From IMG/VR virus record IMGVR_UViG_3300023278_002893, positions 186,001 to 250,000 of that record: 64,000 nucleotides of DNA. One strand, written 5' to 3'. Positions 1,597-53,536 of this stretch are shown here, piece by piece; position 1 is the stretch's first letter; each line of letters begins with the position of its first letter. The translations under genes were made by a program, and so were the position numbers. The notes below the pieces were generated by a model. That model worked only from the letters and a program-made list of their open reading frames with translations, did no database searches and was not told the DNA's origin.

Positions 1597-1797
1597 TTAA
1601 GGTAACAGAACCGCTATACCACTAGTAACCACATCTACATACACACCACCAACAGGTACACCACTCGCAGTAGCATCGAGAGGACCATTAGCAGTTAAAA
1701 GACCGTTAAATGCAAGTGCTAATCCAAGTTTACCATCATCTCGGTACAGCTGTCCCACAGGGGTTACTGTAACGTTCTGCTGATCTGGCTTTGCCAT
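1597..1797 (-). CDS. Small probable virion protein
   Basis: 66 aa, strong RBS, GVPVGGVY motif. Confidence 0.5.
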   Translation of the reverse strand: MAKPDQQNVTVTPVGQLYRDDGKLGLALAFNGLLTANGPLDATASGVPVGGVYVDVVTSGIAVLLP

Positions 1798-1809: not shown

Positions 1810-2145
1810 TTATTCAGACTTTCTTGTAAAAATCAGCTGATCTTTTGTTATTTTAAATTCACCAATACTCGCTACAGCCTTCGATAAGAAGACAATAGTA
1901 TCTTGCCTATTAAGAAGCTCAACGGCTTGCTCAACGGCACGTTCCCGATCATCGCCGGCATCCACTATAGTAGGGCCAGATCCGACGAGTAAAAGAAAAC
2001 CAGAAGCTTTCTTGCGGTCAGCCATAGGATTTAACTCGTGAGCTTTCCTAAATGCGTCTATTTTGTGTCTGAATCTTTCGACAGAGTTGTCGGAAATTAC
2101 GGAAGAAGCGTCAATTGACTGGCTGCTAATTACGAATTTTTTTTT
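1810..2145 (-). CDS. ORF probably expressed as a -1 frameshift extension of the prohead protease (track ORF 1810..2025)
   Basis: Frame is open from the A10 run (2137-2146) to 1810; ATG at 2025 lacks a clear RBS. Confidence 0.55.
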   Translation of the reverse strand, partial: KKKFVISSQSIDASSVISDNSVERFRHKIDAFRKAHELNPMADRKKASGFLLLVGSGPTIVDAGDDRERAVEQAVELLNRQDTIVFLSKAVASIGEFKITKDQLIFTRKSE

Positions 2146-3545
2146 TCAGTCTCAATCACAAAATCCCTAAGAGAGTTTCGGAGAGACTGCGCCTCGTCAT
2201 GAAGTCGAACAATTTGATCTTGTCGTTCCGTTAGGGGCTCTACCGATGCGTCTACTTTATTAGTAACTGCGGGCAGAACAAGATCAGTGGTAAAACTATT
2301 ACCCGGTGTATTAGACAAGAATTCACGTACGGTCTTAGTAAATGCACCAGTGTCATCGGGGTTATTGGTCATAGAGTTTTTCTGATTTCGAAGACACTCG
2401 GGAGCTTTGGCGGTAGCACCAATAACAGGGCAGTGCTCCTCGAACAGAGCACAATAATGCTCCTGAATGACAGCACCTTCGGATTGATCTAGTGCGTTGT
2501 ACTTGGTCAGTCTCTTCTTGAAACTTACACAGGTACCGTCAATATTGCTCCCCACATAACCTGGACCAGGAAGACCACCCCCACTCCAACGAGCGGCTAC
2601 TTCCTTATTAGGGCTAACCGTAAGTACTCTGCTGATTCCTCCGGTCTCCTCATCAAGCTCGAGATAAAGTTTAGGGGCATCTTCGTCCGTCTGAACTGTA
2701 GAAACCTCTACTAAATTATCTGCCATTTCGACCTCCTTGTCAACCTGGGTTTCCCCTGCGGTTTCAGAAAGTACTACTTTGTGTCCTCGGAGATTATCAA
2801 TCATTTCTAGATCCACAACCTGCTCTCCCTTCTCCATCTGCTCACGTCGAGCTGCTGTCTCCATGATGATAGAGTGGGGGTTTGCAGGATTCTTAACAAT
2901 ACCCATCCCACTAAAGGTAATATGTCGAAGAACCCGCGCGACCTGTCGGACACCCATCTCCCTATGACCCGCCATTACCTTTACAAAACCACCTACCAGC
3001 TCATCAGGATCATACCCCAACGCCTGGGCCTCGTCACGTGTGATGATAGTATTGCCGATCTTAATGTCGAAGTCTTTAAAGAAACACTCCATGCTAACCT
3101 TCCACGCGCCTGCAGAAATTTCCTCTGCATACTCGGGGAAGCGCATCTTGTGGATAACACCTGCTACTGCAATGTCCATATCCACACCATCCAGATCCTG
3201 GGAAGCTTTTTCATAATCTGCCATAACTACCAGAGGATCAAACTGGCTACCATCCTTATACATATAAGCACATTCATAGATATGGCCGATGACCTTATCT
3301 TCCTCATGCTCGATATCAATGGCTTTATGCACTACAGTGTTGTGTGCCTTCATCATCTCTGATGGCAAGAAATGTGCACCATTCTTGTTAGTCCCTGCCG
3401 AGACCAGACAAGAGCGCATATATTGAAGATCCTGCTGCTTTTCATCAGGAAAAGCGAGCACGGCAGCTTTCTCCATCGCAGCCTTCTCTACCTCCTGCTC
3501 CACCTCAATGGGTGCATATACTCTAATCTTATTCTCTTCGACCAT
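2130..3545 (-). CDS. Prohead (head maturation) protease-like protein
   Basis: NKNGAHF, IDIEH, WKVSMEC and FSGMGIVKNPA motifs typical of large-phage prohead proteases; between portal and scaffold. Confidence 0.7.
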   Translation of the reverse strand: MVEENKIRVYAPIEVEQEVEKAAMEKAAVLAFPDEKQQDLQYMRSCLVSAGTNKNGAHFLPSEMMKAHNTVVHKAIDIEHEEDKVIGHIYECAYMYKDGSQFDPLVVMADYEKASQDLDGVDMDIAVAGVIHKMRFPEYAEEISAGAWKVSMECFFKDFDIKIGNTIITRDEAQALGYDPDELVGGFVKVMAGHREMGVRQVARVLRHITFSGMGIVKNPANPHSIIMETAARREQMEKGEQVVDLEMIDNLRGHKVVLSETAGETQVDKEVEMADNLVEVSTVQTDEDAPKLYLELDEETGGISRVLTVSPNKEVAARWSGGGLPGPGYVGSNIDGTCVSFKKRLTKYNALDQSEGAVIQEHYCALFEEHCPVIGATAKAPECLRNQKNSMTNNPDDTGAFTKTVREFLSNTPGNSFTTDLVLPAVTNKVDASVEPLTERQDQIVRLHDEAQSLRNSLRDFVIETEKKNS

Positions 3546-4004: not shown

Positions 4005-4262
4005 TTATGCTTGTGATATTGGGGATTCCGGCGCGCAAAGGCCTAAGTTATTTAAAATAAATCCCTCAGGGCACTCAAGAGTGCCTACCGGTTCAGCCCC
4101 CTCCACATTAGTAATAGGGATACAAGAACCCGATTTCGGATCAAAGACTTCCTCAGGTCTACACTGCGGATGGAACTCCTGAGGATCAGTTATCTGACTT
4201 TTGTCAGACCATCCTCTTAGGATTTTCCCAAGTTGGCCGCGATGATCTGGCGAGCATGCCAC
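4005..4262 (-). CDS. Cys-repeat ORF, probable -1 frameshift extension of 4217..6559
   Basis: Two further repeats (CRPEEVFDPKSGSC, CPEGFILNNLGLC); lies in the -1 frame after G GGA AAA. Confidence 0.6.
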   Translation of the reverse strand: MACSPDHRGQLGKILRGWSDKSQITDPQEFHPQCRPEEVFDPKSGSCIPITNVEGAEPVGTLECPEGFILNNLGLCAPESPISQA

Positions 4263-6559
4263 AAAAGATGTTCCTGAGCATCAGCGACTGCCTGGTCTGC
4301 ATACCCATCTATCTTAGACGACCTGGCCAATGCATTTCGCAATCTTGCAACATCCACAGATGCGGTATCGTAAGAATCCTCTACATCTGGGGTATGGTGC
4401 ATTAGATTACGTCGAGTATGTCCGACTAGGGAAGGAGGAAAAGCCTCGTTGGGTAGGTCCTTAGCGGCTACCTTGGACTTCTCCTTGTTTCCTTCCTCTG
4501 TCTCGTTTAGAATAACATCAAGAGCAGAGATTATCTTAGCAAGAGACATGTTACCCACAGTGTCTCCTACCGAGGCAGTGTTTCCTGGATTTTGAGGGCT
4601 GGAACCAGCAGGGCGACTTTTGTCCATGCTGTCCAGTGGGCGACAAATTTTATTCTTAGCATCCCAAATAGTGTCCTTAGGACAATCACTGGGGAGATTA
4701 AGTTTGCCAGCTGGAGCATCAACCAGTCCTTCTCTGTTTCCTGGGTTGGCATCAGCACTCTCATCTTCCGACTTACCCTTAAACGCACCCTTACGAGGCA
4801 TGCACTTTTTGGTAACAGGGTTCACGAACTGTCCCTCAGGACAACCAGGACCTCCCTTGTTACCCGGACCAGACGTGGTAGTCTGAGCCTCGTCCTCGGC
4901 GGACTTGGCTTTCTTCTTTTTCTTATTGTCTTTCTTGTCGTCTTTCTTATCTCCGTCTTTGCCCTTTTTCTTATCCAACATCTTCTGGATGAAGGGAGGT
5001 ATGAATGCATCTTCCTCACTGGACTTCGTATTCTTACTGGAGTCTAGAGGATCACAATCTTGCTTATCCGCATTCCAGATAGTACCCTTAGGGCAATCCT
5101 GAGGCAGTCTAGCAGGTCTTCCCTCAGGCAAGGGAGTGATGTCTCTCTTAGCTGCTTTGCTAGTATCCATTTCGATGCACTTACGTGCACCGAAGTTGTA
5201 CATCTGGCCGGGAGGACACTGGAAATTAACAGGGTCTCTTCGACCCTCAGGCTGAACAGCCTGCTCTGTCTTGACAGCATCGTAAAATCCCTGCACCTTA
5301 GAGCAATTCTTAGACTCGGAACTCCATTCCATTCCAGGAGGGCAGGGTCCTTGATTTACCTCAGAAGACTGCTCCTTCTCATAGGAAGACATCCTCGCCG
5401 CAACAATCTCCTCACGAATAGGACGCATTAGGTCATTGATTACTTCAGCAAAATCTAAAGAAGTTTCAGCCTTAGCAAAATTATTGACCTCAATCTCACA
5501 TGCCTTGGCACGTGCTAGAATCTTTCGTCTAAGTGATGCCTTCTCTGAGGAGGAGAGACCCTTCGCCTGGTTGAATCTGGACATCGCGTTTCTAACACGA
5601 GCGCAGGTGTCTAACGGAAACTTCCTCTTTCCAGGAACACCGAACGCACTGTCAGGCAGAGCATTACGCTGAGCGGATTTAATGGGCGCTGCAGACTCAT
5701 TACCTACCAAACTAGGAGAATCAACTGCGGTCGGGTCGTCGCCATACTCATAAACTTCCTGAGGAAGTGCGTGTCCAAAGTGCTGGGACTTATATCCCTT
5801 ACCAGAAAACTCCTCAACTATATAACCAGCTACATCGTGAGAATGTACCTCGTCCCCATAACCCTCGACGGAAGTCTTACCATTACCAGACGCATCTAGT
5901 GTTACTAGATGGGTGTGGCCGTGAAGGGGATCGGGGGAAGTCATAGCAACCTTACCACTCAGATAACGTGCCAGCTCCTGCTTCTCATCCTCAGTAAGTG
6001 CTGCGGATGACATCAGGGTGTCCTTGTTTAGAGGGATACACTGCCTAAGCTTAAAATCAAAAAGCTGCTTAGGGGGGCACTGGAAATTAACAGTGTCTCG
6101 GCGGCCCTCAGGATCCATATTAACAATCTCCTGATGTCCCCCAGTTCCTGGAGCAGCTGCTTCTTCTACTACATACTCGTTAGCCTCAGTCATTGCAAAC
6201 TCATCGCTAGTCTCAGACTCTGCTTCTTCCAGAGTAACACATCGTCTCTGGATAAAAGAAAAAGTCGTGCCCGCTGAGCACGACTCCGGTTCATCCATAT
6301 CATCTGCGTCAATTGCGACCTCGGTCTGGGACAGAACCTCCACAGACGCGGTACCTCGCCACTCAGGGCCGTGATCAACATTCACACTTCGGCTCTCCAA
6401 CGTGTGATCAATGCTGCCCATGGGAAGACATCGACCACTTGCAGGATCCTTACGATGTCCTTCGGGACAGTCTTCGTTCAACTCAATAGCGAACTCTCTC
6501 ATCTCTGTAAGAAAATCTAAAGGATTATTTCCCTCGTTTGATTTATTATTGTCGGTCAT
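4217..6559 (-). CDS. Head-module protein with eight C-x12-C repeats, a His-rich motif and two DUF6582-like segments
   Basis: Repeats such as CPEGHRKDPASGRC and CPKGTIWNADKQDC; HGHTH...HSHDV; LPDSAF..RKFPL..VRNAMSRF and LPNEAF..LRNALAR. Confidence 0.75.
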   Translation of the reverse strand: MTDNNKSNEGNNPLDFLTEMREFAIELNEDCPEGHRKDPASGRCLPMGSIDHTLESRSVNVDHGPEWRGTASVEVLSQTEVAIDADDMDEPESCSAGTTFSFIQRRCVTLEEAESETSDEFAMTEANEYVVEEAAAPGTGGHQEIVNMDPEGRRDTVNFQCPPKQLFDFKLRQCIPLNKDTLMSSAALTEDEKQELARYLSGKVAMTSPDPLHGHTHLVTLDASGNGKTSVEGYGDEVHSHDVAGYIVEEFSGKGYKSQHFGHALPQEVYEYGDDPTAVDSPSLVGNESAAPIKSAQRNALPDSAFGVPGKRKFPLDTCARVRNAMSRFNQAKGLSSSEKASLRRKILARAKACEIEVNNFAKAETSLDFAEVINDLMRPIREEIVAARMSSYEKEQSSEVNQGPCPPGMEWSSESKNCSKVQGFYDAVKTEQAVQPEGRRDPVNFQCPPGQMYNFGARKCIEMDTSKAAKRDITPLPEGRPARLPQDCPKGTIWNADKQDCDPLDSSKNTKSSEEDAFIPPFIQKMLDKKKGKDGDKKDDKKDNKKKKKAKSAEDEAQTTTSGPGNKGGPGCPEGQFVNPVTKKCMPRKGAFKGKSEDESADANPGNREGLVDAPAGKLNLPSDCPKDTIWDAKNKICRPLDSMDKSRPAGSSPQNPGNTASVGDTVGNMSLAKIISALDVILNETEEGNKEKSKVAAKDLPNEAFPPSLVGHTRRNLMHHTPDVEDSYDTASVDVARLRNALARSSKIDGYADQAVADAQEHLLWHARQIIAANLGKS

Positions 6560-53145: not shown

Positions 53146-53536
53146 GTCGTTGGTCCTTCCTGACTTAAGTATTGAATTTTTTTTTTAGCGTTTCGAAATC
53201 CGACTTCCCCTTTGTGTTATCTTATCCGTCTGTATTCCCTCTTAAATACATTCAGTTTCAATAAGGTTTTCCGTGATACGCCTGCTCGCTGTCGATCGGA
53301 AAATTCTTCCCATAGTTTATCTTCCGATCTCGTCACCCCCGCATCCCCCACACCCAATTCCTCTCTCAGAGCTGCTCACTCTCTTGGTTTCTAAAGACTG
53401 GACTCTCTAACCCATATGGTATTCCCTCTTATGGAGAAGGTATAGATCAGTGGGTGATCCTCTCTCTAAAGGATCTACACTTGCCCCATCAGATTATTTG
53501 ATACCCGCGCGATAATATTAGGTTTTTACACCCTTT

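What the first reader, a model, noticed from the sequence alone, without database searches (positions are those of the whole stretch)
1810..2148. Candidate -1 frameshift or transcriptional slippage at an A10 run extending the prohead protease
Seen: the protease ends GAA AAA AAA AAT TCG TAA. The -1 frame has TGA immediately 5' of the A-run (2146-2148) and is then open for 40 codons (KKKFVISSQSIDASSVISDNSVERFRHKIDAFRKAHELNP), in frame into ORF 1810..2025, whose ATG has no good RBS. A CGACA/TGTCG hairpin lies ~45 nt downstream. Established: A AAA AAN heptamers promote -1 frameshifting and runs of 9 or more A promote RNAP slippage. Inference: two protease isoforms, the longer with ~110 extra residues.
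Basis: partly seen in the sequence, partly recalled or inferred. Interest (0 to 1): 0.7.

Follow-up and report, generated by a model that had tools for sequence, protein, structure and literature searches.

The report
Conserved slippery A-run extends phage protease
A run of ten A's at the end of a giant phage's head-maturation protease gene is a conserved recoding site: a minority of transcripts or ribosomes slip by one base, skip the stop codon and add a 109-residue domain, which has not to my knowledge been reported for this class of phage gene.

Summary
On the minus strand, ORF 2130..3545 (471 aa) ends GAA AAA AAA AAT TCG TAA. The -1 frame is open from the A10 run (2137..2146) to the stop at 1810.

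It is neither an assembly error nor two separate genes. All 18 distinct viral contigs and all 24 metagenome loci examined (some loci are the same contig in both collections), 58-85% identical at protein level, keep:
- an A8-A10 run at this exact spot (A9 or longer in all but one);
- a 0-frame stop 4-9 nt after the run;
- a 109-116-codon -1 frame (one locus carries an internal TAG; two run off their contig).

The extension is conserved from the first codon after the run (pN/pS 0.36, no stops). It has no conserved start codon.

Of 120 protein-cluster representatives, 116 end in the (E/K/Q/G)KK + 1-4 residue signature. Two are contig fragments. Two are natural in-frame fusions with no A-run, and they nest inside the slip-site clade.

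The N-terminal domain has the T4 gp21 / herpesvirus assemblin fold (Z 10.8). The gene lies between the portal-like gene and the major head protein gene.

I therefore favour RNA-polymerase slippage (+1 A), possibly aided by -1 ribosomal slippage on A_AAA_AAA. No RNA or protein data were available. The role of the extension is unknown.

The parts
2130..3545 (-). 0-frame ORF, 471 aa. It contains a protease domain, an acidic variable linker, a Cys-rich beta domain (about residues 290-395) and a long C-terminal helix. The stop TAA is at 2130..2132.
2862..3476 (-). Prohead-protease fold domain (residues about 24-228). H80, H88, S151 and E153 are invariant in 146 sequences from two families.
   Evidence: AF2 model with pLDDT about 90 here. 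VIA-align gives T4 gp21 5jbl Z 10.8, rmsd 2.3 A over 124 residues, and herpesvirus proteases Z 7-9.4. Foldseek BFVD hits named prohead protease. Invariant columns.
2136..2234 (-). Predicted long C-terminal helix (residues 438-470) that runs directly into the slip site.
2137..2146 (-). A10 slip site. The 0-frame phasing is GA_A AAA AAA AAT, so A_AAA_AAA is in phase. A9 is invariant in 18 distinct viral contigs.
2146..2148 (-). TGA in the -1 frame overlapping the first A of the run. The shift must therefore occur within the run.
   Evidence: Present in the relatives whose run is preceded by CTG, not in all of them.
1810..2139 (-). -1-frame extension of 109 codons plus a TAA stop (1810..1812). 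It is conserved from its first codon.
   Evidence: ESMFold2 pLDDT of this chain was 77.
2023..2025 (-). ATG that a gene caller would take as the start of a 71-aa ORF. It has no SD core. It is replaced by CAA/CAG (Gln) or other non-start codons in all 17 other viral contigs; no relative has a start codon at this position.
2079..2092 (-). It is real in this sequence and in the close relative L002. It is broken in the other close relatives (L003, L004) and absent in distant ones, and it lies 44 nt from the run.
1597..1797 (-). Next gene (66 aa, MAKPD...), with a strong SD (AAAGGAGGAAGG) directly after the stop of the extension. It is conserved in relatives and marks the true end of the recoded gene.

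Best explanation
This is a programmed -1 recoding site at the 3' end of the capsid (prohead) maturation protease gene of an uncultivated 298-kb marine-sediment phage.

Standard decoding stops two codons after the A10 run and gives a 471-aa protein. In a fraction of expression events the frame moves by -1 inside the run. The stop is then bypassed and a conserved 109-residue domain is appended (...ETEKK-KFVISSQSID...), giving a 578-aa isoform.

I think the main route is RNA-polymerase slippage that adds one non-templated A to the mRNA. -1 ribosomal slippage of the two tRNA-Lys on A_AAA_AAA is a possible second contributor. Both routes give the same protein.

Shown: the site, the frames, their conservation, purifying selection on the extension, the lack of a start codon, the natural fused versions and the protease fold.

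Inferred:
- Which machine slips, and how often.
- That the long form is the indispensable one, because a derived lineage makes only the long form.
- That the extension is a docking or oligomerisation module needed in low copy number during procapsid assembly. I hold this last point with low confidence.
For: Conservation of the site:
- 18 distinct IMG/VR contigs from at least 16 metagenomes keep an A9/A10 run in the same 10-nt block. They also keep a 0-frame stop 4-8 nt after the run and a -1 frame open for 109-115 codons.
- 24 further metagenome loci do the same: A9 in 17, A10 in 6, A8 in 1. Some of these overlap the IMG/VR contigs.
- 116 of 118 full-length cluster representatives end in the (E/K/Q/G)KK + 1-4 residue signature.

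The extension is coding and has no start of its own:
- The extension alignment has 70% mean column identity, as high as the protease (71%).
- In the 37 codons between the run and the window's ATG, pN/pS is 0.36 in the -1 frame with 0 stops. The other two frames give pN/pS of 1.09 and 1.63, with 64 and 74 stops.
- The first ATG/GTG/TTG in the -1 frame lies anywhere from codon 16 to 74, so there is no conserved start.

Natural fusions:
- P0060 (569 aa) and P0074 (567 aa) are in-frame fusions. P0074 occurs on two contigs from two samples. Its DNA reads ACA CAG ACT TTT GAA where the run would be.
- With the extension-less 380-aa sister family as outgroup, the fused pair nests inside the slip-site clade (supports 97*, 95*, 100*).
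- A profile of the extension searched against 1.84 billion proteins finds only 52-91-aa fragments miscalled from internal starts. The domain therefore exists only behind this site or fused to it.

Mechanism:
- No conserved RNA structure was found within 110 nt downstream or 80 nt upstream.
- A run of nine is the length at which slippage-prone runs come under selection in many bacteria. It is also the length used by T. thermophilus dnaX; S. flexneri mxiE uses a run of Us (PMC1088944).

Assembly check:
- Logan contigs of relatives from four runs cross the run without an indel.
Against: - There is no direct evidence of expression. No RNA run was listed and only contigs, not raw reads, could be laid. 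Neither mRNA heterogeneity nor the 578-aa protein has been seen.
- The A_AAA_AAA heptamer is always in the right phase for ribosomal -1 shifting. About 4 of 118 relatives appear to have only A8 (EKKA... tails; L034), which is short for efficient polymerase slippage.
- The phage encodes an RNA-polymerase-like protein of its own, and its slippage behaviour is unknown.
- The role of the extension is untested. The complex prediction with the major head protein gave no answer.
Confidence: 0.9

Rival explanations
1. The shift is purely ribosomal: a -1 programmed frameshift of the two tRNA-Lys on A_AAA_AAA, on mRNA that faithfully copies the DNA.
For: - The heptamer is in the correct 0-frame phase in every locus.
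- Low-efficiency shifts without a stimulator are known in tailed-phage genes (Atkins et al. 2016, PMC5009743).
- A few relatives seem to have only A8.
Against: - There is no conserved downstream hairpin or pseudoknot at any spacing, and no upstream SD-like element.
- The run is kept at 9 or more in 41 of 42 loci read at DNA level, although only 7 bases are needed. The 9th A stays fixed while the residues it encodes vary in both frames (T/S/N and N/K).
- Runs of this length are themselves polymerase-slippage-prone (PMC1088944).
Confidence: 0.25
2. It is an assembly or sequencing error in a homopolymer. The true sequence has one more A and there is a single 578-aa gene.
For: Homopolymers are error-prone. 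Raw reads of the source sample could not be inspected.
Against: - The same frame break is seen in dozens of independent assemblies from JGI, NCBI, ENA and Logan, in three sequence forms (A10, A9C, A9G).
- The real fused relatives have no A-run at all.
Confidence: 0.02
3. These are two independent genes. The 71-aa ORF 1810..2025 is translated from its own ATG, or by termination-reinitiation, and the open frame upstream of it is chance.
For: An ATG exists in this genome. Forty open codons would occur by chance about 15% of the time.
Against: - The ATG has no SD core and is not a start codon in any of the 17 other viral contigs. The first possible start moves between codons 16 and 74.
- The 37 codons upstream of the ATG are under purifying selection in the -1 frame, starting at the run.
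- Natural fusions exist.
- There is no start-like codon near the 0-frame stop for reinitiation.
Confidence: 0.02

Closest known systems
Transcriptional slippage at A/U runs that yields two products (Thermus thermophilus dnaX A9; Shigella flexneri mxiE run of Us; IS-element transposases)
   Same: A homopolymer run of nine or more in the sense strand, without flanking signals. As in mxiE and the IS elements, the slipped product is the longer one (PMC1088944).
   Different: Here the gene is a virion-assembly protease of a jumbo phage, and the polymerase may be the phage's own. Slippage itself has not been demonstrated.
Tail assembly chaperone G/GT -1 frameshift of long-tailed phages (lambda gpG/gpGT)
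   Same: A low-level shift near the 3' end of an assembly gene gives a fixed ratio of a short protein and a C-terminally extended one. It is often without stimulators and is conserved across very divergent phages. Some lineages use a fusion instead (PMC5009743; PMC10885494).
   Different: That case is in the tail module, and its extension binds the major tail protein. This one is in the head module and extends a protease-fold protein. There is no sequence relationship.
Frameshift-extended major capsid proteins (T7 10A/10B, T3, Lactobacillus phage A2, Listeria phages A118/A500/PSA)
   Same: A phage head gene yields a minority C-terminally extended isoform by a frameshift near its end (PMC5009743).
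   Different: Those extend the capsid protein itself, often with an Ig-like decoration domain. Here the extended protein is the maturation protease, and its extension matches no known family.
Nested protease/scaffold genes (lambda C/Nu3, P2 gpO, Mu I/Z). Recalled from memory, not tested here.
   Same: One head-assembly locus yields two related polypeptides that share part of their sequence, in a set ratio.
   Different: Those use internal in-frame initiation or proteolysis and share C-termini. Here the isoforms share the N-terminus and differ by recoding at the 3' end.
T4 gp21 / herpesvirus assemblin / HK97 gp4 prohead proteases
   Same: The fold of residues about 24-228 (Z 10.8 to 5jbl; Z 7-9.4 to herpesvirus proteases). 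The position between the portal-like and major head genes. Invariant His and Ser residues.
   Different: No sequence-level match to Pfam S78/S77 models or to HK97 gp4. About 250 further residues follow the protease domain, plus the recoded extension.

Membership tests
Programmed transcriptional slippage | Homopolymer A or T run of about 9 or more in the coding strand, conserved among relatives | tested here: met
   A9 is invariant in 18 distinct contigs. In 24 more loci the run is A9 in 17, A10 in 6 and A8 in 1. The genome has only six such runs.
Programmed transcriptional slippage | Adding one nucleotide gives a longer, conserved ORF | tested here: met
   A 109-116-codon -1 frame under purifying selection.
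Programmed transcriptional slippage | mRNA population is heterogeneous in run length while the DNA is not | not testable with these tools
   No RNA run was listed. Only assembled contigs of relatives could be laid.
-1 programmed ribosomal frameshifting | X_XXY_YYZ heptamer in the 0-frame phase | tested here: met
   A_AAA_AAA is in phase in all loci.
-1 programmed ribosomal frameshifting | Stimulatory element: a downstream structure 5-9 nt away and/or an upstream SD-like sequence | tested here: not met
   RNAalifold finds 0 conserved pairs downstream (120 nt) and upstream (80 nt). The window's hairpin is 44 nt away and not conserved. Stimulator-free cases do exist, so this lowers the possibility but does not exclude it.
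-1 programmed ribosomal frameshifting | A trans-frame protein is detected | not testable with these tools
   Uncultivated phage. No proteomics data.
Assemblin-fold prohead (capsid maturation) serine protease | gp21/assemblin fold | tested here: met
   AF2 model from 146 sequences, pLDDT about 90 in residues 30-220. 5jbl_A scores Z 10.8; herpesvirus proteases fill the next ranks. BFVD prohead proteases score E down to 1e-10.
Assemblin-fold prohead (capsid maturation) serine protease | Catalytic Ser/His residues at the active site | tested here: inconclusive
   H80, H88, S151 and E153 are invariant across two families down to 33% identity. I had no residue-level superposition on gp21 to confirm that they are the catalytic pair.
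Assemblin-fold prohead (capsid maturation) serine protease | Match to curated sequence models (Pfam Peptidase_S78 / S77 / S21) | tested here: not met
   No Pfam hit even at E up to 5. hhalign against HK97 gp4 gives probability 0.1. This is a fold-level relative only.
Assemblin-fold prohead (capsid maturation) serine protease | Gene located in the head module between the portal and major capsid genes | tested here: met
   A 625-aa portal-position gene lies upstream. It has no family hit, and a homologue sits in the same position in L020. The major head protein (phrog_2522, E 1e-12) lies about 2.9 kb downstream.
Tail assembly chaperone G/GT frameshift | [quoted passage not shown] | tested here: not met
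   The gene is in the head module and has a protease fold. It is an analogue in logic only.

The most novel reading that the evidence does not exclude
A whole family of uncultivated marine-sediment jumbo phages sets the ratio of two capsid-maturation-protease isoforms by slippage at an A-run. This would be the first recoding event described in a prohead protease gene. The phage's own fused beta/beta'-like RNA polymerase may be the slipping enzyme. The recoded 109-residue domain may be a new procapsid-docking module that limits how many protease molecules enter each shell.
Probability: 0.35. Interest if true: 0.7.

Novelty: new member of a known kind. Interest (0 to 1): 0.6.

Why it matters
- Annotation. 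Gene callers split this gene into a 471-aa ORF and a spurious 52-91-aa ORF. More than a hundred database entries for this family are therefore mis-annotated, and the real long protein is absent from protein databases except in the two fused lineages.
- Biology. Phage recoding is known for tail chaperones and capsid proteins. The main recoding review I searched does not contain the words prohead or scaffold in the 300,000 of its 449,034 characters that are held (PMC5009743). Three full-text searches for frameshifting in protease or scaffold genes returned only tail-chaperone cases in the papers I read.
- A natural experiment. The family contains slip-site lineages, a derived in-frame fusion and a sister family without the domain. 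This makes the function of the two isoforms directly testable.
- Mechanism. It offers a clean A9/A10 site without stimulators for separating polymerase slippage from ribosomal slippage, possibly on a non-canonical phage RNA polymerase.

Tried and rejected
- Pfam and PHROGs scans of the 471-aa protein, the 71-aa ORF and the 111-aa -1 frame gave nothing useful.
- tblastn and megablast against the GenBank phage collection gave no match.
- A PDB sequence-profile search gave nothing.
- The first AF2 run, with only 18 close sequences, failed (pLDDT 33). Adding the 380-aa sister family fixed it.
- ESM Atlas look-ups of the protease gave only a weak Peptidase_S78 lead, and gave nothing for the extension.
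- hhalign against HK97 gp4 was uninformative.
- The first search for sequencing runs, on 3 kb, listed none. The second, on 891 bases, listed only DNA metagenomes held as contigs, with 5-10% of words. These are relatives, not the source sample. Laying them showed no indel at the run but cannot show homopolymer heterogeneity.
- The complex prediction of the extension with the major head protein returned 'no answer'. It is not used as evidence either way.
- The other long homopolymers in the genome, including the T10 at window 53177..53186, show no comparable arrangement. The T10 is intergenic, and the others were judged only from frame openness.
- I considered that the C-terminus of the sister family (KKNFFKKSID...) might be homologous to the junction. 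I judged it chance, because the alignment places it on the preceding helix.

Full report
**What is in the sequence.** The minus strand reads ...GAG ACT GAA AAA AAA AAT TCG TAA. This closes a 471-aa ORF at 2130..3545. The run is exactly ten A's, at 2137..2146. The -1 frame has TGA at 2148..2146, which overlaps the first A. From inside the run it is open for 109 codons, to TAA at 1810..1812. It passes through the ATG at 2025 that a gene caller would use for a 71-aa ORF. A -1 shift after codon AAA 2141..2139 would give 469 + 109 = 578 residues, with the junction ...IETEKK-KFVISSQSID.... The ATG at 2025 has no Shine-Dalgarno core, whereas most neighbouring head genes carry 4-6-nt cores.

**Where it sits.** The window is bases 186001-250000 of a 297,725-base virus record with 47% G+C. 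On the minus strand the gene order is:
- a 625-aa gene in the portal position;
- a 780-aa protein with chitin-binding-type repeats;
- three small ORFs;
- the 471-aa gene;
- a 66-aa gene with a strong SD directly after the stop of the extension;
- genes of 174, 293 and 168 aa;
- a 355-aa major head protein (phrog_2522, E 1e-12), lying just outside the window.

**Is it a protease?** No Pfam, PHROG-with-function or PDB sequence match exists. An AlphaFold2 run on 18 close homologues failed (pLDDT 33). I then added a 380-aa sister family (666 proteins, 33-40% identical) to make a 146-sequence alignment. The model reached pLDDT 75.6, and about 90 over residues 30-220.
- Foldseek against the PDB returned almost only herpesvirus proteases and T4 gp21.
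- VIA-align ranked T4 gp21 (5jbl) first at Z 10.8, rmsd 2.3 A over 124 residues. Herpesvirus proteases followed at Z 9.4-7.
- BFVD hits named prohead protease reached E 1e-10 to 1e-5.
- H80, H88, S151 and E153 are invariant across both families.

The label therefore holds at fold level, and the gene position fits. Membership of the curated S78/S77 sequence families is not met. After the protease domain come an acidic variable linker, a conserved four-cysteine beta domain and a long helix (438-470) that ends at the slip site.

**Conservation of the site.** The search for related loci gave 17 distinct relatives in IMG/VR, from at least 16 metagenomes, at 58-83% protein identity. It also gave one identical contig.
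- Every one has A9 or A10 in the same 10-nt block (A10, A9C or A9G).
- Every one has a 0-frame stop 4-8 nt after the run.
- Every one has a -1 frame open for 109-115 codons.
- A metagenome scan added 24 junctions, some the same contigs as in IMG/VR. These showed A9 in 17, A10 in 6 and A8 in 1, with the same set-up. Two of them run off their contig.
- Among 120 cluster representatives (90% identity) from JGI, NCBI, ENA and Logan assemblies, 112 end in [EK]KK plus 1-3 residues. Four more end in (G/Q)KK plus 2-4 residues, two are contig-end fragments and two are longer.
- Logan contigs of relatives from four runs cross the run without an indel.

**The extension is coding from the run onwards and has no start of its own.**
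- The 18 extension peptides align without gaps from the first residue (KK[NK]F..S..I[ED]A.SV...R[FY]K.K..AF..A...). Mean column identity is 70%, the same as the protease itself at 71%.
- Over the 37 codons that precede the window's ATG, the -1 frame has pN/pS 0.36 and no stop in 18 sequences. The other two frames have pN/pS of 1.09 and 1.63, with 64 and 74 stops.
- The window's ATG is Gln or another non-start codon in every one of the 17 other viral contigs. The first ATG/GTG/TTG in the -1 frame wanders between codons 16 and 74.
- A profile of the extension searched against 1.84 billion representative proteins found only six fragments of 52-91 aa, which are miscalled pieces of this same frame. 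It found no other credible family (three weak hits at E 5e-6 to 1e-5 in long, multi-stretch proteins, taken as spurious).

**Natural fusions.** P0060 (569 aa) and P0074 (567 aa) carry the protease and the extension in one frame. P0074 is encoded on two contigs from two different samples. Its DNA has ACA CAG ACT TTT GAA at the junction, and no A-run longer than 5 anywhere in the gene. I built a maximum-likelihood tree rooted with the extension-less sister family. In it the two fused proteins form one clade (100*) nested within the slip-site family (97*, 95*). The slip site is therefore ancestral to the family, and the fusion is a later single event. A lineage can live with the long form alone, which argues that the long form is the indispensable product.

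**Which machine slips?** RNAalifold found no conserved pair in the 120 nt from the run onwards or in the 80 nt before it. No SD-like element is conserved upstream.

The A_AAA_AAA heptamer is always in phase, so ribosomal -1 slippage is possible. Low-efficiency shifts without stimulators are known in tailed phages (PMC5009743).

Against that, the run is held at 9 or more in 41 of 42 loci read at DNA level, although seven bases would suffice. The ninth A is fixed while the residues it helps encode vary in both frames. Nine is the length at which slippage-prone runs come under selection in many bacteria, and it is the length used by T. thermophilus dnaX; S. flexneri mxiE uses a run of Us (PMC1088944).

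I put polymerase slippage as the main route at roughly 60%, ribosomal shifting as the main route at 25%, and comparable contributions at 15%. Both give the same protein. The phage encodes a 1057-aa ORF with both beta-type and beta'-type polymerase motifs. The enzyme that transcribes this late gene may therefore not be the host's.

**What could not be done.** No RNA run was listed, and no raw reads of the source sample were available. Run-length heterogeneity in DNA or RNA is therefore untested. The function of the extension is unknown: there are no family or fold leads, and the complex prediction with the major head protein returned no answer. My guess that it is a docking or oligomerisation module needed in low copy number is inference from position and from the fused lineage only.

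**Rivals.**
- A homopolymer miscall is very unlikely, given dozens of independent assemblies in three sequence forms, and given that the real fusions lack the run.
- Two independent genes is excluded by the missing start codon, by selection on the codons upstream of the ATG, and by the fusions.
- Decay or a pseudogene is excluded by purifying selection on both parts.

**Novelty.** The mechanism class is known, and so is the logic of a short and a long assembly protein in a fixed ratio (tail chaperone G/GT, capsid 10A/10B). I found no report of recoding in a prohead protease or scaffold gene. The recoding review has no occurrence of prohead or scaffold in the portion of its text that is held. 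Three literature searches returned only tail-chaperone cases in the papers I opened. I therefore file it as a new member of a known kind. It is well supported by comparative evidence and of moderate-to-good interest, and it has a practical annotation consequence for more than a hundred database entries.

Noticed in passing
own genome G000:C1:27802-29211 (outside the window; loci L025, L026): A single 1057-aa open frame matches both Pfam RNA_pol_Rpb2_6 (beta-type) and RNA_pol_Rpb1_2 (beta'-type) above their cut-offs. It is a compact fused two-barrel RNA-polymerase-like protein encoded by the phage.
   Followed up: no
window 4217..6559 (-): A 780-aa protein between the portal-like gene and the protease carries repeated Cys motifs that match the chitin-binding Peritrophin-A domain (CBM_14, E 1e-15). 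It also matches DUF6582 / phrog_16160. This is unusual content for a head module.
   Followed up: no
locus L034, about 2581-2700: The only relative with an A8 run (AAAAAAAAG) also has an in-frame TAG at codon 36 of the extension, at the conserved Gln. The rest of the frame is intact. It could be a variant, an error or early decay.
   Followed up: partly
window 53177..53186: This is the only other 10-base homopolymer in the genome (T10). It lies in an intergenic stretch and joins no reading frames.
   Followed up: yes
proteins P0081, P0238, P0355 (relatives of the protease and of the major head protein): NCBI names place some contigs of this phage group in metagenome-assembled genomes. These are labelled Deltaproteobacteria bacterium, Candidatus Baldrarchaeia archaeon and Candidatus Hodarchaeales archaeon. 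This may reflect binning artefacts or may hint at the host. Runs holding relatives are marine sediment, subsurface and hydrothermal-vent metagenomes.
   Followed up: no
window 2360..2676 (-), residues about 290-395 of the 471-aa protein: A second conserved domain has four invariant cysteines (C339, C365, C372, C384). It is shared with the 380-aa sister family and matches no known family.
   Followed up: no
own genome 183442-183954 (-), locus L024:3442-3954: An HNH / endonuclease VII-like gene sits directly downstream of the major head protein gene.
   Followed up: no
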